A stretch of DNA of 64,000 bases, from the IMG/VR virus record IMGVR_UViG_3300022602_000024, positions 248,001-312,000 of that record, one strand, 5' to 3'. Of this stretch, positions 8,593 through 64,000 are shown piece after piece. The notes beneath the pieces are model-generated. The model had not been told where the DNA came from, ran no database searches, and worked only from the letters and a program-made list of their open reading frames with translations. A program made the position numbers and the translations under genes. The first letter of the stretch is position 1. Each line of letters opens with the position of its first letter.

Positions 8593-8909
8593 ACTCGAAA
8601 ACTTTCACCGCAACCACAACGGTCACGCTCATTAGGGTTGTTGAACTCAAATCCTTCGTTAAGACCGTTCTTAACATAATCTACTGTTAGACCCTGCAAG
8701 TAAACACAACTTTTTGGATCTACGAATAACTTACAGCCAGCGCAGTCAATGACTTGGTCATCGGGCGCAGGTGTATCTACGTATTCTAACACATAAGCAA
8801 GTCCGCTGCAACCTGTTGTTCTTACACCCAGACGAATTCCTTCGCCATGCCCTCTACGAGCAATAACTTGTTTAACTTTGTTAACGGCTTTTTCGGTTAA
8901 GGTAATCAT
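8589..8909 (-). CDS. iscA: Fe-S cluster assembly A-type carrier IscA
   Basis: TTGCSGLAY and C-terminal CGCGESF. Confidence 0.96.
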
Positions 8910-43725: not shown

Positions 43726-45643
<1,918 letters not shown>

Positions 45644-50526: not shown

Positions 50527-50542
50527 AGTGTTCCTGTTTGAA

Positions 50543-51418
50543 TTAGCTAGTATACGGATATTTTGGCAACAAGTCAACGGCTTTGGCTTCCGGATTGCTC
50601 AAAATAAATTCGGCATACTTTTCTTGATTGTCTACAATGGTTTTAGGGAAGTACGAGTCCAATTCCACAATGCTATAACGATCGTTGGGATTGCCACGAT
50701 TCCATTCTTTGCGTTCGGCAATCGACTTTTCTACATCAATCTGCTCAATAAACTCGGGACGATTAACTTCAGCATGTGCAAAGTTCTTGGCCTTGTTACG
50801 CAACCATTCGTTGTTGCCCATATAACCAAAGTGCCAACCACCATGCTCAATCACTTCACATCCATCGTTCTTGAACTGATAAGGCGCTGACATGAATTGG
50901 AAACGTATGCGTCTGAATTCTGTAGGGGTAATGTCTTTCAATAACGCCCGACGCCCGGCCATGGCCCAAATGTCATATTCGCCTGGAGTGGCTCTCATGT
51001 AATTGAACTTGAAGTTGTGCAGGCTCATACGTAGTGCAAATAGGCTTTGATCGCTAGCAACCATGTACTGTAGTGCAGCCGGACGAATGATTTCATCCAA
51101 GTCACTGATCAAGATCAAATCATCTAGGGCAGCATCAGCAATGCCTTGGCGAATTTGATCTCTGTGGTGTGCTTCGTTAACCCAGGAATCTGGATCATTG
51201 GGCATGTCATCAACTTGGATATGGATAATCTTATCTGCCCACTGTGCGTAGCGGGCCTTATTATCTTCGTAGTAGTAAGGCTTTGGATTACCTTGATGTG
51301 TCATATTGGCTTCAACCAAAACAAAGTGGTCGACAAAATCATATAATTCTGTTAATCTTAGTTCAAGTAGATCCAACTCATTGTAGAAGGGGAAACAATC
51401 GTAGATTTTTATTTTCAT
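50543..51418 (-). CDS. Glycosyltransferase family 17 (beta-1,4-GlcNAc-transferase-like)
   Basis: YDCFPFYNELDLLELR, VLVEA..TH.G.PK, ISDLDEI and GGWHF. Confidence 0.88.
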   Translation of the reverse strand: MKIKIYDCFPFYNELDLLELRLTELYDFVDHFVLVEANMTHQGNPKPYYYEDNKARYAQWADKIIHIQVDDMPNDPDSWVNEAHHRDQIRQGIADAALDDLILISDLDEIIRPAALQYMVASDQSLFALRMSLHNFKFNYMRATPGEYDIWAMAGRRALLKDITPTEFRRIRFQFMSAPYQFKNDGCEVIEHGGWHFGYMGNNEWLRNKAKNFAHAEVNRPEFIEQIDVEKSIAERKEWNRGNPNDRYSIVELDSYFPKTIVDNQEKYAEFILSNPEAKAVDLLPKYPYTS

Positions 51419-51473
51419 AGTGATATTTATTTGCTAATAAATACTGTACATTAATTTTCAAAGGCGGTCAACC

Positions 51474-52157
51474 ATGTATGCTGTTGTAAGCATGTGCACT
51501 TCAAACCTAGATGACCTGGGTAACTTAACAAACAAATACAAACTCGAATACTGTGAACGCCATGGTTATGAGTTCTTCAATATCGGCGACGAAGAAATTG
51601 GCCCAGTAGACGGCCCATGGAGTTTTTCAATGGACTGGCATAAACCACGTTATGTCAGCAACCTATTTGCTCAACGCCCAGATATTGAATGGGCACTAGT
51701 AACCGAAGCCGACGCCACCATTACCAACTTGACCATTCCCATGAGTGATCGGGTAGACAATGACTTCCATGTGGTTGTTCCAGTGGATAGACTCAACATC
51801 AATTCCGGCAACATGTTGGTACGCAATAGCCCAGAAGGTCGTGCTTACTTGCAAGCCATGTTGGCAGACGGAGACAAGTACCTTACAAATACCACCAACA
51901 ATCCCATATTTGGATTGCAGTTATGGATGGTAGATACCATTGATCAACATGGTGATATCACAAAGATTGTACCACAAAAGCACATGAACAGTTACGAACT
52001 GGAAATTTACGACTATTGCGATGTCAGCACCGACATCATGGGCAATAGCGGAGTATGGACCCGGGGCGACTGGATTGTGCACTGGCCTGGTATCAGACAT
52101 GAAGTTAGACTTCAACGTGCTGCATCATTAGAAACAGAAGGAAGGATAACAAGATAA
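51474..52157 (+). CDS. Glycosyltransferase family 34-like
   Basis: YCERHGY, WHK, EADA, INSG.MLVRN and GDWIVHWPG. Confidence 0.8.
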   Translation: MYAVVSMCTSNLDDLGNLTNKYKLEYCERHGYEFFNIGDEEIGPVDGPWSFSMDWHKPRYVSNLFAQRPDIEWALVTEADATITNLTIPMSDRVDNDFHVVVPVDRLNINSGNMLVRNSPEGRAYLQAMLADGDKYLTNTTNNPIFGLQLWMVDTIDQHGDITKIVPQKHMNSYELEIYDYCDVSTDIMGNSGVWTRGDWIVHWPGIRHEVRLQRAASLETEGRITR

Positions 52158-52708
52158 TGGCTATACCATTTGGAGAAGATGACACAATCAAAATAGATCG
52201 GTGTCATGCTGATTTATTAAGAGGCTTGATAGTTGCTGGAAAACCCCGGACTGTATTGGAATTGGGCATCGGCGGTGGACAAGCAACGGATGCAATGCTA
52301 GACGGATTAGCGTATAATCAACAAGCATACGAATACACACTGGTTGATAACTGGCTAGACTTCAACAGTACAATGCCTGCCCGAGTTGGCGAGTTATACA
52401 GCAGTAGAGTCAACATTGTTACATCCGGTGAAAAAGAATTTGTGTTCAGCACCAACAAGAAGTTTGATTTGATAATGAGTGATGCAGATCACCACCATAC
52501 ACAAGAATGGTTTGAGTATGTATACGAGAATCTGCTGAATGATGATGGTATACTTTGTTATCATGATGTTATGTTAACTTCACAGTTTCCAAATTTAATG
52601 GAAATATATAACAAGTGCAAAGAACTTAACCTAAGATACAAACTGTTTGACAAAGATAGTTTATCAACCGAAATGTGCTTTCGTGGCTTTTTAGTAATTT
52701 TTAAATAA
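52157..52708 (+). CDS. Class I SAM-dependent methyltransferase (Methyltransf_24-like)
   Basis: VLELGIGGG, FDLIMSDADH and GILCYHD. Confidence 0.85.
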   Translation: MAIPFGEDDTIKIDRCHADLLRGLIVAGKPRTVLELGIGGGQATDAMLDGLAYNQQAYEYTLVDNWLDFNSTMPARVGELYSSRVNIVTSGEKEFVFSTNKKFDLIMSDADHHHTQEWFEYVYENLLNDDGILCYHDVMLTSQFPNLMEIYNKCKELNLRYKLFDKDSLSTEMCFRGFLVIFK

Positions 52709-52715
52709 GGCAGCA

Positions 52716-53366
52716 ATGACAAGTATTCAAGAAACATTTACTGACATATATGTTAATCGACGTTGGGATGAGCCCAACAAACCCAACGAATCGGCCAGTG
52801 GCAACGGATCAACACTGGACTTCACTAGAAATTTACGTAAAGAACTGCCAAAGTTGTTTGACATGTTTGCTATACAATCAGTATTTGACGCACCGTGTGG
52901 TGATTTAAATTGGATGAGTCAAGTGTTATCAGAGTGCCCAGACATTGACTATATCGGCGGAGACATTGTTGCGCCGTTGATCGATCAACTCACTGAACAG
53001 TATGCCGAATATGCCAACATGGATTTTGTTAACATCAATATTATCAATGACGAGCTACCTGCTGCAGATTTAATGATCTGCAGAGACTGTTTGTTCCATC
53101 TAAGCGAAGCAGATGTCAAAACATTCTTTAGAAACTTTGTCTCTTCCGATATTGCGGCTTTGTTAGTTACATCCGATATACTGCCAGAACCCAACAGAGA
53201 CATTGAGACTGGCGACTATCGTCACCTGAATCTATTCACTGCACCTTACAACTTTACCGCCGATTACATATACGAAATCAGCGATTGGCCTTATCCTACT
53301 CCCGCTACTAGAAAAATGTTTATGTGGAGTAGAGAACAAATTGAAGAAATAGTGAGCAAATTTTAA
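52716..53366 (+). CDS. Class I SAM-dependent methyltransferase
   Basis: SGNGS, VFDAPCGD, YIGGDIV and DLMICRDCLFHL. Confidence 0.85.
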   Translation: MTSIQETFTDIYVNRRWDEPNKPNESASGNGSTLDFTRNLRKELPKLFDMFAIQSVFDAPCGDLNWMSQVLSECPDIDYIGGDIVAPLIDQLTEQYAEYANMDFVNINIINDELPAADLMICRDCLFHLSEADVKTFFRNFVSSDIAALLVTSDILPEPNRDIETGDYRHLNLFTAPYNFTADYIYEISDWPYPTPATRKMFMWSREQIEEIVSKF

Positions 53367-53367
53367 T

Positions 53368-54309
53368 ATGAATATTTTTATTACTGGCATGGCAGGTATG
53401 ATCGGGTTTCATACTGCCAAACATTTAACTGCATTGGGACACACAGTAACAGGCGTAGACAACTTCAATGACTATTACGAAGTCAGTTTAAAAAGAGAAC
53501 GTGCACGTATCCTGCAAGACGAGCATGGAGTCGCTGTAACAGAAGCAGATATCATTACACTAGATTACGACTCTGCATTGTCAGGTGTAGATGTAATTTT
53601 ACATTTATCTGCTTATGCCAACCCACGTCACAGTTTGGAATATCCGCAACTGTACATTGACAACAACATTACTGGCACACAAAGATTGATTGAAGGTGCA
53701 GAGCGCATGGGTATACACAATGTGGTATATGCATCTAGTAGTTGTGTGATGCATGGACAAGAATTGCCTTGGAAGGAATCCGACAATCCTGGACATCAAA
53801 ACAATCCATATGGATGGACCAAACGCAGTAATGAATGTCAATTCATATACAGTAAGATCAAAAACACAATGGGTTTAAGATTCTTTACAGTATATGGACC
53901 TTATGGTCGTCCAGACATGGCCTTGTTTAACTTTACTAAAAACATTTTAAACAATGAACCAATCGATTTGTTTAATTACGGAGATATGAAGCGAGACTTT
54001 ACCTTTGTAGACGATATTGTCCAGGGTATTACCTTGGTTATAGACAACTGTGTCAAGCAAGACCATGTGCACGAAATCTACAACATTGGTTATGGTCAAC
54101 AAGTCAATTTGATGGATTTTGTTAGCGAGATTGAACGTTGCTTGGAGCGGAAGGCAGTGACCAACTTGTTGCCCAAGCACCCAGCAGATGTACCAGCTAC
54201 TTGGGCCGATACAACTAAGATTCAGGGTTTGGGTTATCGGGCAACTACCAGTATTACTGACGGTGTTAGCAAATTCATTGACTGGTATCGCAGTTATTAC
54301 CGGATTTAA
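53368..54309 (+). CDS. NAD-dependent epimerase (UDP-glucuronate 4-epimerase-like)
   Basis: ITGMAGMIG, YASSS, YGWTK, LRFFTVYGPYGRPDMA and RDFTFVDD. Confidence 0.92.
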   Translation: MNIFITGMAGMIGFHTAKHLTALGHTVTGVDNFNDYYEVSLKRERARILQDEHGVAVTEADIITLDYDSALSGVDVILHLSAYANPRHSLEYPQLYIDNNITGTQRLIEGAERMGIHNVVYASSSCVMHGQELPWKESDNPGHQNNPYGWTKRSNECQFIYSKIKNTMGLRFFTVYGPYGRPDMALFNFTKNILNNEPIDLFNYGDMKRDFTFVDDIVQGITLVIDNCVKQDHVHEIYNIGYGQQVNLMDFVSEIERCLERKAVTNLLPKHPADVPATWADTTKIQGLGYRATTSITDGVSKFIDWYRSYYRI

Positions 54310-54983
54310 TAATTAATATAACGGCTATTATGGTTAACGCCATATAGTCGTTCTTTAGTTGCGATATTGATAAACATAATATCAACTTGAACCAACACAT
54401 GATCCCCGGTATGGATTTCTAATAAATCGCTGGGGATAAATCGTTGACTGGCCATGTATTCCAAATACTCTTGTATATTTGGTGCACCTATATTGTATTT
54501 GCCTATAGGGCATTCTAGGTAAACTAAATCCACTGCAGGCAGTATTGTTTCTGCTCCACGTAAGATATCCAACTCAGATCCCTGTGTGTCTATCTTTATA
54601 AAGTTAGGTGCAGGCATTTCGCACTCGTTAACAATAGACTCTAGAGTTCTTGCTGGAACTGTTATTGGCGTTTTACCGTCATAGATTGGTGTATTTTCTT
54701 TGTAGTAACTGTCGCCAGTGCCGCCGTAGCCGTCAGTGGTATAATACTCAACTGAGTCTCTGCCAGGGTTACTTAATATTCCGATATAGTAAGGCAAGTT
54801 AGTTCTTTGTAGTGCAGGTTCGTGTGCAACATTGCCCTCAAACAAGTAGAAGTAACTGTTTCTTAACACGCCTGCTTTCATTGGCACGGCCCAATTGCCT
54901 TGATTGGCTCCTATGTCAAATACTGTTTCTATGCGTAACCCGTCTTGCTGAATTTGTTTGAGATAATTTTCTAATGTGTTCAC
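54306..54983 (-). CDS. FkbM-family methyltransferase
   Basis: FDIGANQG and IKIDTQGSELDILRG. Confidence 0.9.
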   Translation of the reverse strand: MNTLENYLKQIQQDGLRIETVFDIGANQGNWAVPMKAGVLRNSYFYLFEGNVAHEPALQRTNLPYYIGILSNPGRDSVEYYTTDGYGGTGDSYYKENTPIYDGKTPITVPARTLESIVNECEMPAPNFIKIDTQGSELDILRGAETILPAVDLVYLECPIGKYNIGAPNIQEYLEYMASQRFIPSDLLEIHTGDHVLVQVDIMFINIATKERLYGVNHNSRYINY

Positions 54984-55936
54984 AAAAATACCGTTTTGAA
55001 TTTATTCATAACTTGATCTGGGGCAAACTGTTCAACCCGCTTGCGCCAATCTTCTGTTGTTGCAAGATCACGTATATGTAATAATTTATCTCGAATTGTT
55101 TCCTGAGTATAAATTAGTCCCGAGTCTTTTAACATCAGTGCATGATTTTGATCGTTGCCACCAGCCCATGACAATACTGGTTTATTCATGTATAAGGATT
55201 CAGCAACTGCCAGTCCAAAACTTTCACCATTGCTACGTGCGTGCAAGGTAGCATCACAGGTGTTAAAGAAGTTGGCTTTGCGTTGAGTATCATGAAACTC
55301 GGGAATGTATCGAATGTTGGCATGTTCGCCCCAAGGTTGTGTTCCAGCAAATACAAACACAAAATCGTCACGTTGAGTAACGATATCTGCAATGGCCTGT
55401 TTAACAAACATCAAGTCAAAGGTCAAAAAGCCACCTATGCGTCCTATTACTGTTTGACCGGGACGGATGTTGAGTTCTTCACGTAGATCACCTGTTGGCT
55501 CAGGCAGTGTAACAATGTGTGGCACATAAGGGCGGTTATCATTATACTGAGCGTTCATTGCCGACGCTAACCACTCACTGATATAAGCATATTCACGATA
55601 CTCGGGCTTTACCTCATGACGTTGCCACACTTCGTGCATAACCACCGGGCAATTGTCAGGAATGAATCTATTGCCGTTGTACAAGAGATCTACATGTTCT
55701 CTGTCGATGATGTCTTGAAGTTCTTGGATATCATCATAAGCAATAACTGTAAACTCCTCTTGTAAGTTAGCAAGAACTTCAGGTTCTGTACCTACATCAA
55801 GAGTCCAAGGCCTAGCACCATCATAACAAATTATGCTTTCATTGCCCAGTATCGTTTGATTGTATCGTGCATAGTCCGTGATGGCAACTGTGCTACCACG
55901 ATAGTTCAATATATCAGTTTGGAATAAGATTTTCAT
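54980..55936 (-). CDS. GT-B glycosyltransferase (GT4-like)
   Basis: IGRIGG and CDATLHARSNGESFGLAVAE. Confidence 0.82.
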   Translation of the reverse strand: MKILFQTDILNYRGSTVAITDYARYNQTILGNESIICYDGARPWTLDVGTEPEVLANLQEEFTVIAYDDIQELQDIIDREHVDLLYNGNRFIPDNCPVVMHEVWQRHEVKPEYREYAYISEWLASAMNAQYNDNRPYVPHIVTLPEPTGDLREELNIRPGQTVIGRIGGFLTFDLMFVKQAIADIVTQRDDFVFVFAGTQPWGEHANIRYIPEFHDTQRKANFFNTCDATLHARSNGESFGLAVAESLYMNKPVLSWAGGNDQNHALMLKDSGLIYTQETIRDKLLHIRDLATTEDWRKRVEQFAPDQVMNKFKTVFL

Positions 55937-56094
55937 TCGACATCGTCAGCAGTGATCTTTTGCCCAAGGTATTGTTTAACTACACGAATCAATTTGCGTT
56001 CTGTGTCATAAACAAACTCTTTGGTGTCGTCTTCGGTATTGATAACCAAAATAAAACCATTTGCGGCACGACGAATTTCTAAAGTTTCAAACAT
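55933..56094 (-). CDS. 53-aa hypothetical protein; absent from the ORF track
   Basis: MFETLEIRRAANGFILVINTEDDTKEFVYD...; AGGA SD; ATGA-coupled to the next gene. Confidence 0.7.
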   Translation of the reverse strand: MFETLEIRRAANGFILVINTEDDTKEFVYDTERKLIRVVKQYLGQKITADDVE

Positions 56095-56148
56095 AATTGT
56101 TCCTAAAAAGAGTTGATAGCATTATAATAGCATATATTGATTTGTGTG

Positions 56149-56895
56149 TCAAACGTTTGTGATACCAAAACGCCCATAATCAAAAGGCACAATTTGGTTT
56201 TCGTACTGATTGTAGTTTAACATAAGGTCTTTGGCAATATCTTTGAACATGGTGTGATACTCATCACTCATATGGCCAACACGATCCATTTGATATGGCG
56301 TTACACCAATCAAATCACCTTCGTGTGCGCTAATAGTTTCAAATGCAAAGTCTAACAATACACCTCTAGCGAAATGTCTCTTGGCCATTTCTCGTGATAG
56401 CTCTGTATTAGGTAAAAATATAAATCGAGTTTGGGGAAATTGGGCAGGCAAATCTAAACACCATTTGACCATTTGTTCGTAGTTGAACTGGGCCTGTGCT
56501 TGATTGTGCAGGACTTCGTAGTAAAGTCCCAGTGCTTGTATGCACTTTTCTGCTTCGCCGGGCTGAAATAAATGCCGGTCTTCTTCGTAGATAGCTCTGT
56601 TTTCGGCGTGTGCTGATAAGATCTTTTGCCATTTGGGATCATCTATGTACAAACGATTGTCCCAGGTAAAAGTAAAGAAAGCATAATCAAACTCCACGCC
56701 GCGAGCCTGTGCTTCTTTCCATTGTGTGATAGCGTAGTATTGATTGCTACCACCCAACCCTGATGTGATTACAGGAGCATCGAGTTCTTCTAATAGGCGT
56801 TGTGCCCAGATTTTCTTTTCTGGGGGCACTCGATACGTTGGCCAACGATGCCAAACTATGTCAATATAACTGTCACCAAATAGTCCAATTTTCAT
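56149..56895 (-). CDS. SGNH-hydrolase-like protein
   Basis: IGLFGDSY, GLGGSN and C-terminal GH. Confidence 0.65.
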   Translation of the reverse strand: MKIGLFGDSYIDIVWHRWPTYRVPPEKKIWAQRLLEELDAPVITSGLGGSNQYYAITQWKEAQARGVEFDYAFFTFTWDNRLYIDDPKWQKILSAHAENRAIYEEDRHLFQPGEAEKCIQALGLYYEVLHNQAQAQFNYEQMVKWCLDLPAQFPQTRFIFLPNTELSREMAKRHFARGVLLDFAFETISAHEGDLIGVTPYQMDRVGHMSDEYHTMFKDIAKDLMLNYNQYENQIVPFDYGRFGITNV

Positions 56896-56906
56896 TCTTG
56901 TCCTTG

Positions 56907-57179
56907 TGTACTAATAAGTTTGAGCACAATACATCTGCTTTTCGACTGTGGACCACAATGTGTGTTGGAGCGACCAACAACCACTAACTGAGCAAGCTCA
57001 GTATTGTTCATGGAATCTTAAACGTTTTCGCAGTTTTAAAATCTAATATACCCTCGGGAGTACCCGAATCCGCCTATCCAGCGCACGAGGTATGGGTTGT
57101 GAATTGCTTCACTACTGCTACTAAGCCTACCACACGTATCAGATAGTCGCCACACTTTGTGCTCAAACTTATTAATACA
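56907..57179 (-). ncRNA. Putative structured non-coding RNA (~273 nt) of unrecognised family
   Basis: 23-bp terminal stem with one G-U pair; internal GCAA and CUUG tetraloop hairpins; dedicated promoter directly upstream; no credible ORF. Confidence 0.72.
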
Positions 57180-57184
57180 AGCTG

Positions 57185-57213
57185 ATTATAAGTTATTTAC
57201 ACACAAAAGTCAA
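57185..57213 (-). promoter_or_regulatory. Sigma70 promoter with embedded late motif, driving the ncRNA
   Basis: TTGACT-17 nt-TATAAT with TAAATA in the spacer. Confidence 0.8.
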
Positions 57214-57230
57214 GGATTTTTTAAAATAAT

Positions 57231-57318
57231 TGGCGGAAACGGTGAGATTTGAACTCACGGAACTTTTCAAGTCGCTGGTTTTCAAAACCAGAGCCATAGA
57301 CCACTCGACTACGTTTCC
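57231..57318 (-). tRNA. tRNA-Ser(TGA)
   Basis: Cloverleaf with long variable arm; CTGGT-TTTGAAA-ACCAG; G73 and encoded CCA. Confidence 0.93.
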
Positions 57319-57481
57319 AATAAATACTGCATGATATCCGAAGATTTAGAGTTTGCTTATAGACTTTTGTACACACAGTTGGCCAACAAACCGTATGCGC
57401 CTGCGGCATATCATACTAATTCCAGGGATTTTGTGCCGGACCCTATACTAACGGATCCAAAGTTCATGCTAGATGAAGATT

Positions 57482-57557
57482 TGGTGCAACCTCCAGGAAT
57501 CGAACCTGGTTCAACGGCTCTTCAGACCGCCGCTATGACCACATCAGCTAAAGTTGC
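57482..57557 (-). tRNA. tRNA-Phe(GAA)
   Basis: GCGGT-CTGAAGA-GCCGT, GGTTCGATTCC and encoded CCA. Confidence 0.93.
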
Positions 57558-57588
57558 AGATAAATAAGTTTAACTTCAAAGGATTAAT

Positions 57589-58335
57589 ATGTCTTCACCA
57601 GGAATTACAATCGGACCAGGTATTACAATCGGCGGCGGAATAGACATCGGCGGCGGATATAACTCTTACAGCAGTGGCAACGGCAGTTTGCAGTTTTCGA
57701 ATACCGGAGATGTAAAAATTACCGACAGTAATAGATTGAGTTTAAGCACAGGAAACAACTGGACCATTGAAGGTTGGTTTTATTTTAATTCTTATTCGAA
57801 TCAAGACCGCTATTTTGACAAATATAACAACAGCAACAACGAATACATATTCTGGGCCGAAACTGCTGGAACACGTTCGTTTGTTACTTATTCAGCGGGT
57901 GGCGGAACTCAAAACATGGACTGTGCATTTAACAATCCTCCACTGAACACTTGGGTTCATTTGGCCTTTGTAAGATCTGGCAGCACATTCAATGTTTATC
58001 AAAACGGCACAGTGGTTGGAACTTCTACTGGAATAGTTGGTTCTGTTAATGTCAATTCTGGATCCGCATTTGAACTGGGATATAGCGGAAGCTATAATGT
58101 CAGCAACTTTAGGATAGTGCCCGGGGTCGCAGTATATACTGGTGCATTTACGCCACCTGCTGCACCTTTAGGTGTCACTCAATCTAGTGGTACTAATATC
58201 AGTGCAATCACTTCAGGTCAAACTGCACTATTATTGAATACTTATACTGCAACGCCTTTGTTGGATGCATCAGGTTATTATGGTAATGTACCAGTTAATG
58301 GCACAATTACCTACTCATCTGCAGCTCCATTCTAA
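57589..58335 (+). CDS. LamG/concanavalin-A-like domain protein
   Basis: GITIGPGITIGGG N-terminus, WTIEGWFY, WVHLAFVRSG and SNFRIV.G.AVYT. Confidence 0.85.
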   Translation: MSSPGITIGPGITIGGGIDIGGGYNSYSSGNGSLQFSNTGDVKITDSNRLSLSTGNNWTIEGWFYFNSYSNQDRYFDKYNNSNNEYIFWAETAGTRSFVTYSAGGGTQNMDCAFNNPPLNTWVHLAFVRSGSTFNVYQNGTVVGTSTGIVGSVNVNSGSAFELGYSGSYNVSNFRIVPGVAVYTGAFTPPAAPLGVTQSSGTNISAITSGQTALLLNTYTATPLLDASGYYGNVPVNGTITYSSAAPF

Positions 58336-58339
58336 TATT

Positions 58340-58414
58340 TGGTCTGGCCTGCAGGAATCGAACCTACATTCGTAAGGTAGAAGCCTACTGTACTATCCAT
58401 TGTACTAAAGACAG
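58340..58414 (-). tRNA. tRNA-Arg(TCT)
   Basis: GTAGG-CTTCTAC-CTTAC, T-arm and CCA; one acceptor-stem mismatch. Confidence 0.9.
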
Positions 58415-58420
58415 AATGCG

Positions 58421-58507
58421 TGGTGCGGGATACCAGATTTGAACTGGTACGCTTTATTAAGCGGCGGGTTTTAAGCCCGCTGGGTCTGCCGATTCCCCCA
58501 ATCCCGC
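58421..58507 (-). tRNA. tRNA-Leu(TAA)
   Basis: GCGGG-CTTAAAA-CCCGC, long variable arm and CCA. Confidence 0.93.
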
Positions 58508-58527
58508 AAAAAATACTTAATTAAAAG

Positions 58528-58601
58528 TGGTGCCCCACGACAGAATCGAACTGCCATCACAGGATTACAAAACCAGTGTACTACCATTGTACTAGTAGGG
58601 C
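58528..58601 (-). tRNA. tRNA-Thr(TGT)
   Basis: Loop TTTGTAA, T-arm and CCA; two U-U mismatches in the anticodon stem. Confidence 0.85.
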
Positions 58602-58602
58602 T

Positions 58603-58676
58603 TGGCAGGGGAACTAGGGATCGAACCTAGAATAGCAGAATCAAAATCTGTTGTGATACCATTTCACTATTCCCCA
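58603..58676 (-). tRNA. tRNA-Gln(TTG)
   Basis: Loop TTTTGAT, G73 and CCA; U1-U72 mismatch. Confidence 0.9.
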
Positions 58677-58683
58677 ACTAACC

Positions 58684-58759
58684 TGGTGGTAATAAGTAGA
58701 ATCGAACTACTGACAGGCGGCGTATGAAGCCACTGCTCTACCAACTGAGTTAACGATCC
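58684..58759 (-). tRNA. tRNA-Met(CAT)-like gene with unpaired acceptor stem (chimeric or pseudo-tRNA)
   Basis: GTGGC-TTCATAC-GCCGC, intact T-arm and CCA, but 5' GGATCGT pairs with 3' TATTACC at only 2 of 7 positions. Confidence 0.75.
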
Positions 58760-58766
58760 AAATGTG

Positions 58767-58991
58767 TTAGCGAACCTTACGAATTCCTTCAAGTCCCAAC
58801 TCACCATTCTGGATTTCTAGGAGTGCAGTGACTGGTGTATGAAGATGTTCAATACGATTGCTGTGTCTGTTGTTGGCACTGATCTCACGTGCTCGTGCCG
58901 CGGCAATGATAACCAAGTTAAATCGATTGCCACCTACGTTATCCACGCATCGGTTAGTGTCAATATATGTTCCACGACTGATATAACTCAT
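58767..58991 (-). CDS. rpoZ: RNA polymerase omega subunit homolog
   Basis: CVDNVGGNRFNLVIIAAARAREI...PVTALLEIQNG matches the omega pattern NRF.LV..AA.RAR...AL.EI..G. Confidence 0.88.
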   Translation of the reverse strand: MSYISRGTYIDTNRCVDNVGGNRFNLVIIAAARAREISANNRHSNRIEHLHTPVTALLEIQNGELGLEGIRKVR

Positions 58992-59015
58992 AATTGCCTT
59001 TCTTTGTAAGTATGT

Positions 59016-59044
59016 ATTATAACATGTCTTTTGTTTGTTGTCAA
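59016..59044 (-). promoter_or_regulatory. Consensus sigma70 promoter for rpoZ and the tRNA cluster
   Basis: TTGACA-17 nt-TATAAT with extended -10 TG. Confidence 0.88.
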
Positions 59045-59047
59045 CTA

Positions 59048-59644
59048 TTACATTGCAGGTCCATTTCCATTTTTACGGAAATCAACTTCACCTCCTTGTG
59101 CTTTGATGAGTTTGATAGCATCCTCAAACAAGATAGGTGCAAAGTCTGGCAACTGCTCTACACAGGCACACCAGTATCTTGGGTCAACTACCTTGGTGTT
59201 GCCCGCTTTCTTTGTCCATCCTGGCATCATAACACGATTAGCGTGCAAGTGACCATGTATGTTGGTACCAAAGCGTCCCAATGACTCAGGGTGCAAAGGG
59301 ATATGACTCAAGATCATGCCCGACATCACATGGTAAGCTCGCAACTCGCGAAAGTGCTCACGATAGTCTTCGTCTCGGAAAATGTCGTGATTGCCACGGA
59401 TCAGGACTTTGTCTCCGTTTAAGCGATGCATGATTTTCAATGCTCGGCGATTGATCACAACATCGCCCAAATGGTAAACTTTGTCTGTGGGCCGAACACG
59501 TTCGTTCCAAGCCCGAACCATGGCTTCGTCCATTTCTTCTGGATCCGTCCATGGGCGCAATTTTGTCACTCCGTCATCACGTGTGAATCTACATACTCCG
59601 GCATGACCGAAGTGCGTATCACTGACTAAAAATACACTAGGCAT
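59048..59644 (-). CDS. Calcineurin-like metallophosphoesterase
   Basis: SDTHFGH, HLGD, GNHD, SHIP and HGHLH; start MPSVFL. Confidence 0.92.
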   Translation of the reverse strand: MPSVFLVSDTHFGHAGVCRFTRDDGVTKLRPWTDPEEMDEAMVRAWNERVRPTDKVYHLGDVVINRRALKIMHRLNGDKVLIRGNHDIFRDEDYREHFRELRAYHVMSGMILSHIPLHPESLGRFGTNIHGHLHANRVMMPGWTKKAGNTKVVDPRYWCACVEQLPDFAPILFEDAIKLIKAQGGEVDFRKNGNGPAM

Positions 59645-60110
59645 ACCATATCTCCTTAAAGCCCTCTTCTTCAGTGGGCATTTCAAAACTTGCCAACATA
59701 CCTTCCAATACTGCATCAGGAATTTCTTTACCAGGTCGGCTATCTAGTCTACGTTTTAATTCAATCCTTGATGGAGTCCCAAATACCACTGCAATTGCAT
59801 AGTAGTCCGGAAGCATATTGAACTTTCTTGTACGACTAGTAACTGTAGTTGATGTTTGATCCCAAATAATGTCCCGACCAGATTCACGTGCTGCAACAAC
59901 TTCTTGTGCCATTAGTTCAACAGCAGTAGGCATATATTCATTGAATACTTCCGAATATGTTTTGCCTTGTGTAATAGCATAGGCCAGCACAAATTTGTCA
60001 GTGGATATATGCGTACAAGTATCTGCCCAGTCTTGGTTACTGACCCAGGTGCTTTTACCCGATCCAGGCACACCCACTAACACATAAAGTTTTGGTTGTT
60101 TTGTTTCCAT
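59637..60110 (-). CDS. P-loop kinase (polynucleotide kinase-like, AAA_33)
   Basis: VGVPGSGKST, ISTD, IIWDQT and R...R. Confidence 0.88.
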   Translation of the reverse strand: METKQPKLYVLVGVPGSGKSTWVSNQDWADTCTHISTDKFVLAYAITQGKTYSEVFNEYMPTAVELMAQEVVAARESGRDIIWDQTSTTVTSRTRKFNMLPDYYAIAVVFGTPSRIELKRRLDSRPGKEIPDAVLEGMLASFEMPTEEEGFKEIWYA

Positions 60111-60128
60111 ACTGTATTATACTATAAA

Positions 60129-61454
60129 TCACCGTATTTGCAAAATACGATTTTCTTTTTCCAGACAAACTGATCCTGAGTGTTGTTTTAATGCCACAAT
60201 TAACGCATCACTGCGGCTTTTTAGCCACGATAATCCATAACGTGCTATAGTGTGTTCCATGTTATAAGCATTACTGACCCACATATACACATTGCCTTGT
60301 AATGTGTTAACAAAAGTATCGACCTGTTCAGTATCATGTAGATCCAGCAGAGTATAGTCAATCGTTAACTGGCAATACTGTTGCCAAGCAGATTGAAAGT
60401 CTGCGGCAGTCATTCTAGCTGACGTTAAAAATGCTGACACTTCAGTGTCCCATGTATTCCAACTGCGCCAAGCATAAATTAAATCGGAATGTTGTTTTTG
60501 GTACTGATCAAAAACTTGCTGGTAATCAGCAAAGTTACCGTCCCAGTTAGCTACCAAATATCTTTGATAATCCAATGCAGGTTTGCTAATGTCAAATAGG
60601 CTAACTCTGGTATCAGCATCAAATCCTTGAGAATTTAATACTGCCACTGCTTTTAATCCGCCACATACACCTACATAGTGGTCAATCTTACGCGGTGTGG
60701 TTATCAGCACTGGTTCACTATTTAATACATAAACTGTACGTAAGTCATCCGCAAACAAACCACGTATATGACCAGCATATTTTTGTAGCGGTATTACAGT
60801 GGGGTTGAATGTCCAGTCCTTAAACAACTGTTCAAGTTCCTTTTGATTGTCTGTAGGATACAAATAGACTTTTCTATTTCTAATGTTATTGTTTACATTA
60901 ATTAATCGGTATCCATGTTCTAAAAATGTTCGTACTACATGGGTACCAAACTCAAATTCTCGGACTTGATATGTTTGTGTGCCCGTAGCGGGTCGAATCC
61001 AATAGGGAGTATATTCATCATGAAAGTTTTCTTTACTACGTTCTACGCAACAACTAGTAAAACGATATCCCCCAGGTACACCCGGGACTGCGCCGAACCG
61101 TGGCCGACCCACTGCTGTCCACGCCTGCAAGTTCAAACAAAAGAACTGCGGATCAATATTGTAATATCCTCTACGATCCAACAAGTGTCCCACTAATGGA
61201 GCGTTGTTATCGATGCTGTCTGAGATGATTTCATCGTTAATACTGCCCAGGCGTAGATAGTTGCCCAATGCCGACACCACTACGAAATCTACTCCACGGT
61301 CTGCAAGCTCTATCAGTTTATCATCTAAGTGTGTGGTACTATCAAATCGCCAACCCGCTACAGGAAAGTGATAATATTGATTTAATTCTAATAAGCGTGT
61401 GTGTACCACTTCGCCAACATCAGTGTTGTCATAACACAAAAAAACTTTATTCAT
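60129..61454 (-). CDS. Hypothetical protein
   Basis: 441-aa ORF with no recognised family. Confidence 0.7.
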   Translation of the reverse strand: MNKVFLCYDNTDVGEVVHTRLLELNQYYHFPVAGWRFDSTTHLDDKLIELADRGVDFVVVSALGNYLRLGSINDEIISDSIDNNAPLVGHLLDRRGYYNIDPQFFCLNLQAWTAVGRPRFGAVPGVPGGYRFTSCCVERSKENFHDEYTPYWIRPATGTQTYQVREFEFGTHVVRTFLEHGYRLINVNNNIRNRKVYLYPTDNQKELEQLFKDWTFNPTVIPLQKYAGHIRGLFADDLRTVYVLNSEPVLITTPRKIDHYVGVCGGLKAVAVLNSQGFDADTRVSLFDISKPALDYQRYLVANWDGNFADYQQVFDQYQKQHSDLIYAWRSWNTWDTEVSAFLTSARMTAADFQSAWQQYCQLTIDYTLLDLHDTEQVDTFVNTLQGNVYMWVSNAYNMEHTIARYGLSWLKSRSDALIVALKQHSGSVCLEKENRILQIR

Positions 61455-62397
61455 TGACAGTGACTCGTAGTTGATCTGCCGAAAAACTATTTCTACGATT
61501 TCGGAGCATGACCAAAAATTCTTTACCTGATACTACTCGTCCAACAGGCATGCCGCAAATTGCCGGTGTGTATGTTACACCACCTTTGGCTAACCAATTT
61601 TGAAAATCTGTTGTTTTAACAATGTCTGATCTTCTTAATGGCGAAATATCAATCGCTAGTTTTGCTGAGTACCCTAACATATGGGTTATGTCCCATGCTC
61701 CTGCATCATCATCTTCGTAATAAGCAATTATATAATCTTTGCCTAGTATGCTGGTTCCTACCCATACATCATAATCGCCACTATCATCCCAATATGGATA
61801 ATCTTCTTGCTCTATATTAAAAAAACATTCTTTAATAAGTCTGGTGCCATCGTTGATGTAGGTGTTGGCAATAATTTCAACTTGTTGAGCCAATTCTGAA
61901 ATATTATTGGTTTTAAGATCTGTTTTAACATACAGTTCTGTTTTATGTACTATATCATTGATTTGATCTATCAGATACAAAAATCTATCCTGATCCGACT
62001 CCTTTAACTGAAATGTCAAAGGCACTCTATCATTCCACACATACGGCGGACCATCATAATATGAACGATGTGCAGTAGTAAATGCTCGATGCAAGTCATT
62101 CAGATAATGCTGGGTTTCTTTGGTTCTTTTTTGCATCAGATCTACATCAACTTGATATAAAAAGTCGGTACCCATTGCATTTAATTCATTGATAGTATCA
62201 GTGAGACGTTGTATTTGCGTGTCGACAAATCCCTGCGGAGGTGAAAGCATGATTCCGCCATAAGTCTTTGTGTAAAATATTGTCGGATAGTCCAAAAACA
62301 TTTCTGTAATTTTCGAAATAAATTTGTCTGTAAAAGAATTTTTTACAACTTCGATTTGAGAAACACCCAATGGAGATTCTATTGTGATTGTTGACAT
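61447..62397 (-). CDS. Hypothetical protein, distant paralog of 37854..38723
   Basis: LNDLHRAFT, INDIVHKTE and LGK...DDD. Confidence 0.7.
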   Translation of the reverse strand: MSTITIESPLGVSQIEVVKNSFTDKFISKITEMFLDYPTIFYTKTYGGIMLSPPQGFVDTQIQRLTDTINELNAMGTDFLYQVDVDLMQKRTKETQHYLNDLHRAFTTAHRSYYDGPPYVWNDRVPLTFQLKESDQDRFLYLIDQINDIVHKTELYVKTDLKTNNISELAQQVEIIANTYINDGTRLIKECFFNIEQEDYPYWDDSGDYDVWVGTSILGKDYIIAYYEDDDAGAWDITHMLGYSAKLAIDISPLRRSDIVKTTDFQNWLAKGGVTYTPAICGMPVGRVVSGKEFLVMLRNRRNSFSADQLRVTVNE

Positions 62398-62426
62398 GTT
62401 CGTATTTACTCCTATAAATACCCTAT

Positions 62427-63548
62427 ATGAACAATTATTGCCCTGACTTATTCAACACTATCTTTATACAAAAAGTCAATGAATCAGAGTCCGAGATTGG
62501 ACATTGTTGTGTTAGCAAGTTGAGTGACCCAGTATCCACTATTGATTTTCAAAGTGATTTCTTAGCTACCAATCGACAACATTTTTTATCAACAGGCAAT
62601 CTCCCGCCTGCTTGTGTTTACTGCACCACTGCTGAATCCAAAGGGGAAATTTCAAGACGCACTAAACGGTCAAGACCTTATGTAGAAAACAATAACTATC
62701 CAACTGAAGTAGTGGTAGAACATTTAGATTACAATTGCGACAATATATGTAATTTGAAATGTATAATGTGTAGCGGATACTACAGCAGTGCCTGGAGAGA
62801 AGATGAAGTAGCACTAGGTTTCAGAATAGATTATCGTACTAAACCTACCAAACACAACACAATGATATACGATGCTGATGTGAGTAAACTCAAAAGCATT
62901 TATTTCAACGGAGGCGAACCCTTAATGACTCGGGATCATATAAATGTGCTGAATCATGCGTTGTCTAATAGTCAAGAACCACAACATATTCGGATTAGCT
63001 ATAGCAGCAACGGCACCTTTCCGATGACTGACGAGATGGCAGATTTGTGGAAACAGTTCGAAGCAGTTTACATCAACTTCAGCATTGACGCCACAGAAAA
63101 AGAATTTGAGTACATACGGTTTCCTGCAATATGGGCTGACGTTGAAAAAAATATTGATACTTTCCGCTTGCCAAATTTGGTAACAAAAATTACTGCTACC
63201 GTAGGAGTACACAATATATTGTACTTTGACAAATTGTACCATTGGGCAGCTAAACGCAACATAGAAATATATGTACAAGATACCAATGGTAGATCACAAC
63301 TTGCAATACAAAACTTTCCCAGGGCTGGCAAAGATCGTTTGATTGCTTATCTTAATAAATTACCAGAGTCTGGCAGTAAACAATCGTTGTTGAATCTTGC
63401 ACACAACATCAATAACGACGGGCATGCACGATGGATCGAGTATCTTAACAAACTAGACCGTATGCGAGGCAACAACTGGAGAAATAGTCTAAGTAGACTG
63501 AATGAAATCAACAGGTCATGGATGTATGGAGTAAGGGGTGAGATTTGA
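62427..63548 (+). CDS. Radical SAM protein with twitch-like N-terminus
   Basis: HCC, CVYC, CNLKCIMC, FNGGEPL, FSIDA and YIRFP; TATAAATA promoter at 62413-62420. Confidence 0.92.
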   Translation: MNNYCPDLFNTIFIQKVNESESEIGHCCVSKLSDPVSTIDFQSDFLATNRQHFLSTGNLPPACVYCTTAESKGEISRRTKRSRPYVENNNYPTEVVVEHLDYNCDNICNLKCIMCSGYYSSAWREDEVALGFRIDYRTKPTKHNTMIYDADVSKLKSIYFNGGEPLMTRDHINVLNHALSNSQEPQHIRISYSSNGTFPMTDEMADLWKQFEAVYINFSIDATEKEFEYIRFPAIWADVEKNIDTFRLPNLVTKITATVGVHNILYFDKLYHWAAKRNIEIYVQDTNGRSQLAIQNFPRAGKDRLIAYLNKLPESGSKQSLLNLAHNINNDGHARWIEYLNKLDRMRGNNWRNSLSRLNEINRSWMYGVRGEI

Positions 63549-63604
63549 ACTCACGGTTGTACTGGTTTGCAATCAGTTGCCTTGGACCACTCGGCCACCC
63601 TTAC
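63527..63604 (-). tRNA. tRNA-Cys(GCA)
   Basis: Loop TTGCAAA, U73 and CCA; 3' end overlaps the end of the convergent radical SAM gene. Confidence 0.9.
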
Positions 63605-63605
63605 A

Positions 63606-64000
63606 TTATTTTTTTTGCCGAACTAAACGAACAGGTCCTTGAATCATACGAGAACCTGGTTGACTAACAGGATTTACTAAAGAGATATACTTGTCGTAGT
63701 ATTTTTTATCCATAGTAAGATTTAATTTGTTTAAAAAACTTAAAAAGTAATCCCAATTTCTCCAGATTTGTTCAATATCAATTTCATAATCAAACAAACC
63801 CGAATTATAATATTTTCGAATGTCATTTTCAATAATACGTTTATTTTCAGCTGGGTCTCCATTGGCGGATGGTATCAGACCTGTTTTTAATATAAGGTCT
63901 TTATTGACTCTATCAAAATCCAAACTGTACAGATATATCTTGATTTGATTTTTTTCTACTATATTTTTGTATGAACATGTTGATATCTGTTGAAAATATA
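63606..64000 (-). CDS. Partial AT-rich hypothetical protein; 5' end probably outside the window
   Basis: ORF C-terminus ends at 63606. Confidence 0.5.
   Translation of the reverse strand, partial: YFQQISTCSYKNIVEKNQIKIYLYSLDFDRVNKDLILKTGLIPSANGDPAENKRIIENDIRKYYNSGLFDYEIDIEQIWRNWDYFLSFLNKLNLTMDKKYYDKYISLVNPVSQPGSRMIQGPVRLVRQKK

What the first reader, a model, noticed from the sequence alone, without database searches (positions are those of the whole stretch)
56907..57213. Unrecognised ~275-nt structured RNA with its own promoter next to the phage tRNA cluster
Seen: a TTGACT-17-TATAAT promoter (57185-57213, with a late TAAATA inside the spacer) points into an ORF-free stretch. The first and last 23 nt of that stretch (57157-57179 and 56907-56929) are complementary. 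Their single difference is a U-G wobble only on the minus strand, which matches the promoter direction. Inside are GUGAA-GCAA-UUCAC, ACUGAG-CUUG-CUCAGU, UCGGG-UACU-CCCGA and UGUUGG-UCGCU-CCAACA hairpins, a CUAUC/GAUAG long arm and a CGACU/AGUCG long-range pair. It lacks tmRNA, RNase P, SRP and tRNA hallmarks. Inference: a multi-branched phage ncRNA, possibly expressed both early and late and released from a processing stem. It could be a ribozyme, scaffold or decoy, comparable in context to the tRNA-associated GOLLD/ROOL RNAs but much smaller. The SD of the downstream SGNH gene lies just 3' of the stem.
Basis: partly seen in the sequence, partly recalled or inferred. Interest (0 to 1): 0.85.

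Follow-up and report, generated by a model that had tools for sequence, protein, structure and literature searches.

The report
New structured RNA in phage tRNA arrays
The flagged stretch is a real, roughly 273-nucleotide folded RNA gene that matches no catalogued RNA family, recurs at one fixed slot in the tRNA gene clusters of very large uncultured phages, and has an unknown job.

Summary
A near-consensus sigma-70-type promoter (57213-57185, minus strand) ends 5 nt before a 273-nt stretch (57179-56907). Its first and last 23 nt pair, with one U-G wobble on the minus strand only.

I found 34 distinct homologues (49-97% identical) on large IMG/VR and metagenome phage contigs. None was found in 185,579 prokaryote species genomes or 50,697 deposited phage records.

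Across the family about 13 helices are kept by compensatory changes. On 68 pairs, 91% are paired and 199 double-change cells compare with 60±6 in shuffles. About 65 positions in the 30-sequence alignment are invariant, many of them in junctions and loops. No ORF is conserved. Rfam 15 gives no match.

The gene sits in a fixed slot: tRNA-Ser, then the RNA, then tRNA-Thr. It either starts 0-3 nt after the tRNA's CCA or has a TATAAT box a few nt upstream.

It is therefore a stand-alone stable RNA gene of phage tRNA arrays. It is not a riboswitch of the downstream gene, a MITE or a coding region. It is probably matured together with the tRNAs. Its function is unknown. The closest analogues by context only are GOLLD/ROOL and T4 RNAC/RNAD.

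The parts
57185..57213 (-). Sigma-70-type promoter TTGACT-17-TATAAT. The -10 box ends 5 nt before the first base of the terminal stem.
   Evidence: 11 of 12 matches. Most relatives that are not fused to a tRNA carry an equivalent -10 box, often with TTGACA, at the same short distance from P1.
56907..57179 (-). The RNA gene, 273 nt: a member of a new family of about 263-305-nt structured RNAs.
   Evidence: nhmmer and CM hits in 34 distinct sequences. Covariation. No Rfam match.
57157..57179 (-). P1, 5' strand of the terminal stem (23 nt here, about 18 bp in most relatives).
   Evidence: Nearly every P1 pair shows compensatory changes, for example CG:18 UA:7 AU:5.
56907..56929 (-). P1, 3' strand of the terminal stem.
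57145..57156 (-). P2 hairpin AGU[GUGGCG]ACU. The loop core UGGC is invariant in the family.
   Evidence: All three pairs show double changes (GC/AU/CG, GC/AU, UA/CG).
57140..57143 (-). P3 5' strand UCUG, pairs with 56934-56937 (CAGA).
   Evidence: G-C changes to A-U in L018 and L029.
56934..56937 (-). P3 3' strand CAGA.
57130..57137 (-). P4 5' strand AC-G-U-GUGG, pairs with 56945-56951. The window group has a G-A mismatch at the variable pair.
   Evidence: The variable pair reads AU:12-13 UA:10 CG:7 GC:1.
56945..56951 (-). P4 3' strand CCAC-A-GU, inside the block CAUUGUGGUCCAC, which is invariant in the pattern-1 set. It is followed by the conserved bulge CGAAAAG (56938-56944).
57115..57118 (-). 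P5 5' strand GCAG, pairs with 57030-57033 (CUGC). It closes the domain that holds P5a and P6.
   Evidence: GC/AU, CG/UA and AU/GC alternations. The flanking GAGUA...GAAA is replaced by a Watson-Crick helix in the L046 group (read).
57030..57033 (-). P5 3' strand CUGC.
57099..57112 (-). P5a hairpin GUGAA-GCAA-UUCAC, a variable insertion present in some lineages only.
   Evidence: a similar GUAGAGCAAUCUAC occurs in L048, L053, L043 and L061.
57051..57090 (-). P6 three-way junction: CCU/GGG closing stem, P6a hairpin CGCU-GGAUA-GGCG (57083-57071) and P6b hairpin UCGGG-UACU-CCCGA (57067-57054).
   Evidence: P6b apical pair GC:20 AU:12-13 CG:1; P6a shows several pair types. P6a is the only part that differs from the 97%-identical relatives, and it keeps pairing there.
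57008..57013 (-). P10 5' strand CCAUGA, pairs with 56953-56958 (UUGUGG).
   Evidence: Two independent compensatory changes: L061 C-G to U-A and L063 A-U to G-C.
56953..56958 (-). P10 3' strand UUGUGG.
56987..57002 (-). P7 hairpin ACUGAG-CUUG-CUCAGU. Most relatives have GCCU-GGGA-AGGC here.
56960..56984 (-). P8 (GUG/CAC) enclosing the P9 hairpin UGUUGG-UCGCU-CCAACA.
   Evidence: P9 pairs read GC/AU/CG/UA.
57231..57318 (-). tRNA-Ser(UGA), the upstream neighbour on the same strand. tRNA-Ser is the usual upstream neighbour of the family.
56895..56905 (-). SD AAGGA and ATG of the 248-aa gene (56895-56149). It starts 12 nt after P1, with no promoter or terminator called in between.

Best explanation
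57179-56907 (minus strand) encodes a stable, highly folded non-coding RNA of a previously uncatalogued family. The family belongs to the tRNA gene arrays of very large phages known only from metagenomes.

Shown:
- The family exists.
- Its fold has about 13 helices: a long terminal stem P1, then P2-P4, leading to a junction that carries a P5/P6 domain and a P10/P7-P9 domain.
- That fold is kept by compensatory mutation.
- About 65 positions in the 30-sequence alignment are invariant, many of them in junctions and loops.
- The gene keeps a fixed slot between tRNA-Ser and tRNA-Thr, on the tRNA strand.

Inferred:
- The RNA is made either by read-through of the tRNA operon or from its own sigma-70-type promoter. 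That promoter would place the transcript start at about the first base of P1.
- Its ends are cut by the host enzymes that mature the neighbouring tRNAs: an endonuclease just after the upstream CCA, RNase P at the downstream tRNA, then 3' trimming. P1 would stop that trimming and protect both ends.
- In this window, where a protein gene follows instead of tRNA-Thr, the RNA would have to be released by a cut in or after P1 (RNase III or RNase E type). Otherwise it stays as a protective 5' end on that mRNA.
- The folded RNA then acts in trans, most likely on the translation or tRNA machinery, as a ribonucleoprotein, a binder or a ribozyme. Which of these applies is unknown.
For: Homologues:
- nhmmer E-values down to 1e-86.
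- 10 plus 6 viral contigs and 29 metagenome contigs from two independent conserved-block patterns.

Covariation:
- RNAalifold predicts 54 pairs, 28 of them compensatory.
- On 68 hand-placed pairs, 91% are paired. 39 pairs and 199 cells show double changes, against 25±2.5 pairs and 60±6 cells in shuffles (0 of 500 shuffles reach the observed values). Slid controls give 15-17 pairs and 36-40% paired.
- On the CM alignment, 27 pairs are 97% paired, with 81 double-change cells against 26±3 (0 of 500).

Strand: 93 G-U cells against 24 A-C cells in the variable pairs.

Selection: the element is 97.1% identical to a relative whose neighbouring gene is 91.2% identical (17.7% divergence at third codon positions) and whose upstream spacer is 86.5% identical.

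Context:
- P1 starts -2 to 0 nt from the annotated end of a tRNA in L058, L047, L028, L008 and L025, and 2-6 nt after the tRNA-Ser end in L064, L063 and L061.
- tRNA-Thr follows 11-18 nt after P1 in 11 of the 34 variants.
- Most variants separated from the upstream tRNA by inserted genes have a TATAAT-like box a few nt upstream, often with TTGACA.
- There is one copy per contig, and a single CM hit in the window.
- No ORF is conserved.
Against: - There is no expression data of any kind. Transcript ends, stability and processing are all inferred.
- In the window, and in L018 and the DctP-linked lineages, an ORF with an SD starts 12-45 nt after P1 with no terminator. There the RNA is formally a 5' leader.
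- P1 is only about 18 bp in most members, which is short for RNase III.
- Nothing identifies a partner or an activity.
- The family could already be among the 8,495 unnamed IMG/VR candidates of PMC10690425. I could not check this because the supplements are not held.
Confidence: 0.72

Rival explanations
1. It is a cis-acting 5' leader (riboswitch, thermosensor or mRNA stabiliser) that controls the gene immediately downstream, here the 248-aa GDS-motif protein.
For: In the window the promoter, the RNA and the SD/ATG are contiguous, with no terminator or second promoter called. L018, whose protein is only 41% identical, has the same RNA-then-gene arrangement. In L023 and L026 a DctP-like ORF starts 36-44 nt after the RNA.
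Against: The downstream partner is not conserved. tRNA-Thr follows at 11-18 nt in 11 variants, a DctP-like gene in others, and the GDS-motif gene only in the window group and L018. There is no alternative-structure expression platform: the SD lies outside P1 and is never sequestered. Several members are fused to the 3' end of a tRNA rather than to a promoter. No riboswitch family matches.
Confidence: 0.08
2. It is a DNA-level element: a miniature inverted-repeat transposable element or other mobile insertion bounded by 23-bp terminal inverted repeats.
For: It has perfect-looking terminal inverted repeats. The element is absent from the syntenic position upstream of the homologous gene in L007, where tRNAs sit instead.
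Against: There is a single copy in the window and one per contig. No target-site duplication flanks the repeats (...CAGCU|UGUA...UACA|CAAGG...). The slot between tRNA-Ser and tRNA-Thr stays fixed across 49-97% sequence divergence. The arms covary to keep pairing and tolerate G-U but not A-C. The interior is more conserved than the arms.
Confidence: 0.02
3. It is a very divergent or reduced member of a known universal RNA class that phages sometimes carry (tmRNA, RNase P RNA, SRP/4.5S RNA, 6S RNA or Y RNA), too far diverged for the Rfam models.
For: Its size, its paired 5' and 3' ends, its several GNRA-type loops and its position among tRNAs all suit such RNAs. The invariant hairpin loop UGGC could pair with the GCCA 3' end carried by 25 of the 26 distinct phage tRNA-Ser genes. 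That would resemble the NCCA-binding motifs of RNase P L15 and T-box RNAs (from my own knowledge).
Against: No Rfam 15 model reaches E of 10 or better on the element alone, either in the window or in L058, with permissive filters. The one exception is a chance lncRNA match on the wrong strand. None of ten homologue loci gives a hit either. ARAGORN finds no tmRNA. There is no 3' CCA or T-arm, no tag ORF, no P4-type pseudoknot with the CR-I/CR-V sequences, and no SRP domain IV hairpin (read).
Confidence: 0.05
4. It encodes a small protein. Candidates are the 39-codon ORF 57011-56892, whose stop overlaps the downstream ATG, and the 39-codon GTG ORF 57155-57036.
For: An ATGA start/stop overlap with the downstream gene exists in the window. 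The AUG lies in the CCAUGAA block, which is invariant in the 30-sequence set.
Against: From that AUG the reading frame is open for 7 to more than 35 codons, in shifting frames across the family, and the peptides are unrelated. Substitutions are paired across helices rather than at third codon positions. The window and its 91%-identical-gene relative differ at only 1 of 150 nt here.
Confidence: 0.02

Closest known systems
GOLLD and ROOL RNAs (large ornate RNAs of phages and prophages)
   Same: They are phage-encoded, elaborately folded, of unknown function and 'often near tRNA islands' (PMC12286853). GOLLD is sometimes linked to tRNAs in the same transcript. They show similar evidence of selection on structure.
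   Different: There is no sequence or structure homology: the Rfam GOLLD and ROOL models do not match. This RNA is two to three times smaller (263-305 nt, against roughly 580 to over 800). It has a fixed slot between tRNA-Ser and tRNA-Thr and a long terminal stem. Whether it oligomerises is unknown.
Phage T4 RNAC and RNAD (stable small RNAs of the T4 tRNA region)
   Same: They are stable RNAs transcribed from a phage tRNA gene region, with roles that are still unknown (PMC3014915). From my own knowledge, they are matured from the tRNA precursor transcripts.
   Different: From my own knowledge they are about half the size. No sequence similarity was found: blastn of two family members against 50,697 phage records, a collection expected to include T4-like phages, returns nothing.
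Processing stems of rRNA operons and T7 early mRNAs (RNase III sites)
   Same: The 5' and 3' flanks pair into a long duplex that encloses the functional RNA, inside a polycistronic transcript that also carries tRNAs (established knowledge).
   Different: Here the stem is part of the conserved mature-looking structure. Its sequence is partly conserved as well as its pairing, and it is only about 18 bp in most members. RNase III cleavage is untested.
T-box leader RNAs and the RNase P L15 loop (recognition of the tRNA NCCA end)
   Same: An invariant single-stranded UGGC in a hairpin loop is complementary to the GCCA end of the adjacent tRNA-Ser. This is a lead only.
   Different: No T-box or RNase P model matches. 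There is no specifier loop, no terminator/antiterminator and no P4 core. Four nucleotides of complementarity are expected by chance. The same loop can pair inside the RNA instead (G-C to A-U change at 32/226).

Membership tests
Any Rfam 15 family (4,227 covariance models) | A score at or near the family's gathering threshold against its covariance model | tested here: not met
   The window scan 54000-64000 finds only tRNAs. On the element alone with permissive filters, the only hit is an 11-bit match on the wrong strand at E = 5. L058 gives no hit. Ten homologue loci give only tRNAs.
GOLLD / ROOL | Homology to the conserved GOLLD 3' domain or to the ROOL core (Rfam models) | tested here: not met
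   no match.
GOLLD / ROOL | Phage-encoded and located near tRNA islands | tested here: met
   This is a shared context, not a defining feature on its own.
tmRNA | tRNA-like domain (acceptor stem with 3' CCA, plus T-arm) and an internal tag reading frame | tested here: not met
   ARAGORN finds no tmRNA in the window or in any locus. The 3' end lacks CCA and a T-arm. No ORF is conserved.
RNase P RNA | P4 long-range helix with the CR-I and CR-V sequences; a match to the RNaseP_bact_a/b, arch or type-T models | tested here: not met
   No Rfam hit. The conserved blocks do not include the CR-I/CR-V consensus as I recall it. Catalytic activity is not testable here.
Riboswitch / cis-regulatory leader | A constant functional class of downstream gene, and an expression platform that sequesters a terminator or the SD | tested here: not met
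   The downstream element varies between tRNA-Thr, a DctP-like gene and the GDS-motif gene. The SD lies outside P1.
MITE / small mobile element | Multiple dispersed copies, target-site duplications, terminal inverted repeats conserved as DNA | tested here: not met
   Single copy. No target-site duplication. The arms covary as RNA, with G-U asymmetry.
T4 RNAC / RNAD | Sequence homology to the T4 rnaC or rnaD genes | tested here: not met
   blastn (word size 11) of the window element and of L058 against 50,697 phage records gives no match.
T4 RNAC / RNAD | Stable RNA co-transcribed and co-processed with phage tRNAs | not testable with these tools
   The genomic arrangement fits, but there is no transcript data.
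Structured non-coding RNA (general) | Statistically supported covariation in a conserved secondary structure, and no conserved ORF | tested here: met

The most novel reading that the evidence does not exclude
This is a new class of catalytic or tRNA-binding RNA specific to giant phages. One possibility is an RNA that grips the GCCA/NCCA 3' ends of tRNAs through its invariant UGGC loop, and then helps process, protect or sequester phage or host tRNAs during takeover. Another is a self-assembling RNA-only particle like ROOL and GOLLD. The invariant junction nucleotides, the several GNRA-type loops, the possible sarcin-ricin-like AGUA/GAA motif next to P5, and two mutually exclusive pairings that are both 100% conserved would all fit an active, possibly switching, tertiary fold.
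Probability: 0.2. Interest if true: 0.92.

Novelty: new variant of a known kind. Interest (0 to 1): 0.78.

Why it matters
Large, intricately folded bacterial and phage RNAs with many invariant junction nucleotides are rare. Those whose function is known are ribozymes, riboswitches or the cores of essential ribonucleoproteins.

This family is mid-sized (about 265 nt), so it is tractable for SHAPE, crystallography or cryo-EM. It has a well-defined covariation-supported fold and an unusually precise genomic address inside tRNA arrays. It may be a third, independent case alongside GOLLD/ROOL and T4 RNAC/RNAD, which would suggest that phages routinely ship structured RNAs with their tRNAs.

That makes an old open question directly testable: what do these tRNA-island RNAs do? 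Here it can be asked with a small RNA that has clear mutational targets. It also gives annotators a model for a gene that metagenome pipelines currently leave blank or over-call as small ORFs.

Tried and rejected
Searches that found nothing:
- blastn and tblastn of the element and the downstream protein against INPHARED phages.
- Pfam, PHROGs and NCBIfam on the downstream 248-aa protein.
- A PDB profile search with the protein alignment.
- Foldseek on a confident AF2 model: only weak hits with E above 0.03. GDSL/SGNH entries are among them, so 'SGNH' stays a plausible label and is not shown.

Searching by synteny largely failed. The contigs of the protein's closest relatives below 92% identity lack the RNA at that place (L007) or have it about 900 nt upstream (L008). 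Most of the 12 viral loci found with the protein alignment have no RNA.

An all-against-all column covariation scan was too noisy because of shared phylogeny.

I used a 201-position core model instead.

The second pattern gave 8 hits in prokaryote genomes. All align only over the pattern itself and fail the covariance model, so they are chance matches.

I could not check whether the family is already in the IMG/VR csRNA catalogue, because no supplements are held.

Rejected readings: coding ORF, MITE, riboswitch of the GDS-motif gene, the CUAUC/GAUAG arm, and a conserved late promoter.

The MFE fold of the window sequence alone disagrees with the family structure in the interior. It pairs GGCUUAGUAGCAGUA with the P7 region. 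I did not use it.

Full report
**Source and surroundings.** The window is part of IMGVR_UViG_3300022602_000024, a 354-kb uncultured phage contig. It encodes GroEL, ribonucleotide reductase, replication proteins, several radical-SAM enzymes and sugar-modifying enzymes. The finding lies at the downstream end of a minus-strand tRNA cluster (Gln, Thr, Leu, Arg, Phe, Ser).

**Check of the observation.**
- Promoter: TTGACT-17-TATAAT at 57213-57185 on the minus strand is one of the three best promoter-like sites (11-12 of 12 matches) in the 4 kb scanned.
- Inverted repeat: 56907-56929 and 57157-57179 are 23 nt long and 96% complementary. This is the best inverted repeat in the 64 kb, and shuffles give no chance matches. 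The one mismatch is U-G on the minus strand only.
- Folding: the 286-nt transcript folds with z = -5.2.
- Only ORFs of 39 aa or less occur.
- ARAGORN and Rfam find nothing on the element.
- The SD AAGGA (56905-56901) and ATG (56895) of a 248-aa gene follow directly.

**Finding relatives.** The element has no match among 50,697 phage records. Contigs carrying a 92%-identical copy of the downstream protein (L003-L006) carry the element.
- The element is 97.1% identical there.
- The gene is 91.2% identical, with 17.7% divergence at third codon positions.
- The upstream spacer is 86.5% identical.
- tRNA-Phe is 100% identical.
- The differences cluster in one hairpin, which keeps pairing: CGCU-GGAUA-GGCG against CGCC-AACGAA-GGCG.

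An nhmmer search of loci fetched through more distant protein relatives then found true, diverged homologues. One is in L008/L009 (E = 7e-28) and lies between tRNA-Val and tRNA-Thr. The other is in L018 (E = 2e-12).

Their alignment exposed invariant blocks, which I used as search patterns.
- CATTGTGGTCCACNGTNGNAAAGNAGA found 10 viral and 29 metagenome contigs, and none in one genome for each of 185,579 prokaryote species.
- An independent 5' block, TGGCNNCNNTCTNATACNNGTGGNAG, found six more viral members.
- That second pattern also gave eight genome hits. These align only over the pattern and fail the covariance model, so they are chance.

In all there are 34 distinct sequences, 263-305 nt long and 49-97% identical to the window's. 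There is one copy per contig. Many lie on contigs of 65-357 kb; the rest are on shorter fragments.

**Structure.** RNAalifold on the 30-sequence alignment predicts 54 pairs, 28 of them with compensatory changes. I placed 68 pairs by hand on the trimmed alignment A6.
- 91% of cells are paired.
- 39 pairs and 199 cells carry changes on both sides.
- Column shuffles give 25.2±2.5 pairs and 59.6±6.2 cells, and 0 of 500 shuffles reach the observed values.
- Controls with the partner slid by 1-3 columns give 15-17 pairs, 32-43 cells and 36-40% paired.

A 201-position covariance model of the core (R1) realigned 33 members. On its 27 pairs, 97% of cells are paired and 81 cells have double changes, against 26.4±3.2 in shuffles (0 of 500). 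Slid controls give 17 cells or fewer.

G-U cells outnumber A-C cells 93 to 24 in the variable pairs.

**Fold in window coordinates.**
- P1: 57179-57157 with 56929-56907.
- P2: hairpin 57156-57145, loop GUGGCG.
- P3: 57143-57140 with 56937-56934.
- P4: 57137-57130 with 56951-56945. The conserved CGAAAAG bulge lies between P4 and P3 on the 3' side.
- P5: 57118-57115 with 57033-57030. It encloses the variable hairpin P5a (57112-57099) and a three-way junction P6 (57090-57051) with hairpins P6a and P6b.
- P10: 57013-57008 with 56958-56953. It encloses hairpin P7 (57002-56987) and P8/P9 (56984-56960).

P10 was invariant in the first 30 sequences. It gained two independent compensatory changes in members found with the second pattern: L061 C-G to U-A and L063 A-U to G-C.

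About 65 alignment columns are invariant, many of them in junctions and loops. The CGACU/AGUCG pairing is compatible in all 34 sequences, with one G-C to A-U change, but it competes with P2 and P4, which are themselves supported by covariation. This could be a tertiary contact or a conformational switch, and I leave it open.

**Coding, mobile-element and known-family readings.**
- From the AUG in CCAUGAA (invariant in the 30-sequence set) the frame stays open for 7 to more than 35 codons and gives unrelated peptides.
- There is a single copy, no target-site duplication and a fixed genomic slot, which argues against a MITE.
- Rfam 15 gives nothing for the window element, for L058, or for ten homologue loci, apart from tRNAs.

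**Context.** The recurrent order is tRNA-Ser, RNA, tRNA-Thr(UGU), all on one strand.
- In L058, L047, L028, L025 and L008, P1 begins -2 to 0 nt from the annotated end of the upstream tRNA. In L064, L063 and L061 it begins 2-6 nt after the tRNA-Ser end.
- In 11 variants tRNA-Thr begins 11-18 nt after P1.
- Cassettes of about 1.6 kb are sometimes inserted on one or both sides. They hold a DctP-like plus a redoxin-like gene, or a radical-SAM/SPASM gene.
- Most variants that are not fused to a tRNA, including those with such a cassette upstream, carry a TATAAT or TATACT box a few nt upstream of P1, often with TTGACA at 17 nt. The window is one such case.
- The GDS-motif gene is adjacent only in the window group and L018, and about 900 nt away in L008.

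This pattern of variable neighbours, constant boundaries and two alternative ways of defining the 5' end is what an autonomous RNA gene shows. A leader of a particular gene would not show it.

**How it probably works.** All 149 distinct phage tRNAs in these loci encode CCA. From established knowledge of E. coli-type tRNA maturation, their 3' ends are therefore made by endonucleolytic separation followed by exonucleolytic trimming. A cut just after the tRNA-Ser CCA and RNase P cleavage at tRNA-Thr would leave the RNA with short tails. Those tails would be trimmed back to the 18-23-bp P1, which then protects both ends.

In the window the transcript would start at about 57179-57177 and run into the 248-aa gene. 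Release needs a cut in or after P1 (RNase III or RNase E type). Otherwise the RNA stays as a structured 5' end of that mRNA.

All of this is inference, because there are no expression data. The function is not known. The conserved core and its company point to the tRNA or translation apparatus. One concrete but weak lead is that the invariant P2 loop core UGGC is complementary to the GCCA 3' end carried by 25 of the 26 distinct phage tRNA-Ser genes.

**Comparison with known systems.**
- GOLLD and ROOL are phage RNAs 'often near tRNA islands' with unknown function (PMC12286853).
- This RNA shares the context of both and homology with neither.
- A catalogue of 8,495 unnamed candidate structured RNAs from IMG/VR exists (PMC10690425). 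I could not check whether part of this family is listed there.

**Verdict.** It is a new family of a known broad kind: phage tRNA-island structured RNAs of unknown function. It has unusually strong comparative support and a precise genomic address.

Noticed in passing
window 57231-57318 (minus): tRNA-Ser(UGA) sits between tRNA-Phe and the RNA's promoter in the window and in L033. It is cleanly absent from the otherwise co-linear relatives L003-L006, which are 90-97% identical in the flanks. This is a recent tRNA gain or loss right next to the RNA gene.
   Followed up: partly
window 58677-58760 (minus): A degenerate tRNA-Met(CAU): Rfam tRNA 32 bits covering model positions 8-63 only, and not called by ARAGORN. 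Its 3' two-thirds are identical to the intact tRNA-Met of L003, but the 5' acceptor and D-stem are replaced. Relative to L003, the window has lost tRNA-Val and tRNA-Lys and broken tRNA-Met.
   Followed up: partly
window 59048-60110 (minus): A P-loop kinase with weak similarity to bacterial Pnkp and PNK-3'-phosphatase models overlaps a calcineurin-like metallophosphoesterase, right beside the tRNA cluster. This may be an RNA end-healing (tRNA repair) pair.
   Followed up: partly
L023 4176-5808 and 6124-7603; L026 3089-4618 and 4944-6579; L059 7597-9210: In relatives the RNA is flanked, sometimes on both sides, by duplicated cassettes of a DctP-like (TRAP solute-binding family) gene plus a redoxin-like gene. 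In L026 a radical-SAM/SPASM gene (5284-6579) and a 127-aa ORF take their place on the upstream side. These are odd cargo to find inside a phage tRNA array.
   Followed up: partly
L025 7049-7141, L047 785-874, L058 6459-6548 and others: The tRNA-Ser just upstream of the RNA is often called with anticodon ACU (A34), which is unusual. L029 1901-2001 has a tRNA called with a four-base anticodon 'tacc', and L046 5988-6063 has an unassignable anticodon.
   Followed up: no
window 57589-58335 (plus): A 248-aa concanavalin-A-like/Laminin_G_3 protein is encoded on the opposite strand in the middle of the tRNA cluster. PHROG matches are to virion and baseplate proteins. Its start carries an 18-nt tandem duplication (57597-57632).
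   Followed up: no
window 57331-57567 (plus): A 78-codon ORF antisense to tRNA-Phe is called as a gene in the metagenome annotations of L003 and L006. It is probably a spurious call over the tRNA and the 163-nt Phe-Ser spacer.
   Followed up: no
window 57145-57149 with 56943-56947 (RNA positions 31-35 with 233-237): The pairing CGAC/GUCG is compatible in all 34 family members, yet it is mutually exclusive with P2 and with the outer pairs of P4. Changes at the shared positions are exactly the transitions that keep both partners pairable. This may be a conformational switch or a tertiary contact.
   Followed up: partly
window 8906-10228, 42546-43676, 62427-63548; 43726-45345: The window holds three radical-SAM genes and a full-length GroEL (up to 71% identical to chaperonins in the phage collection), together with a block of sugar-nucleotide and glycosyl/methyl-transferase genes at 48776-55936.
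   Followed up: no
window 56149-56895 (minus): The 248-aa protein belongs to a family of over 100 metagenomic members with invariant G-D-S, N163 and H208. It gives a confident AF2 model (pLDDT 95). It matches no Pfam, PHROG, NCBIfam or PDB sequence, and Foldseek gives only weak similarity to GDSL/SGNH hydrolases. It looks like an uncatalogued hydrolase-like family, and relatives often lie next to tRNAs.
   Followed up: partly
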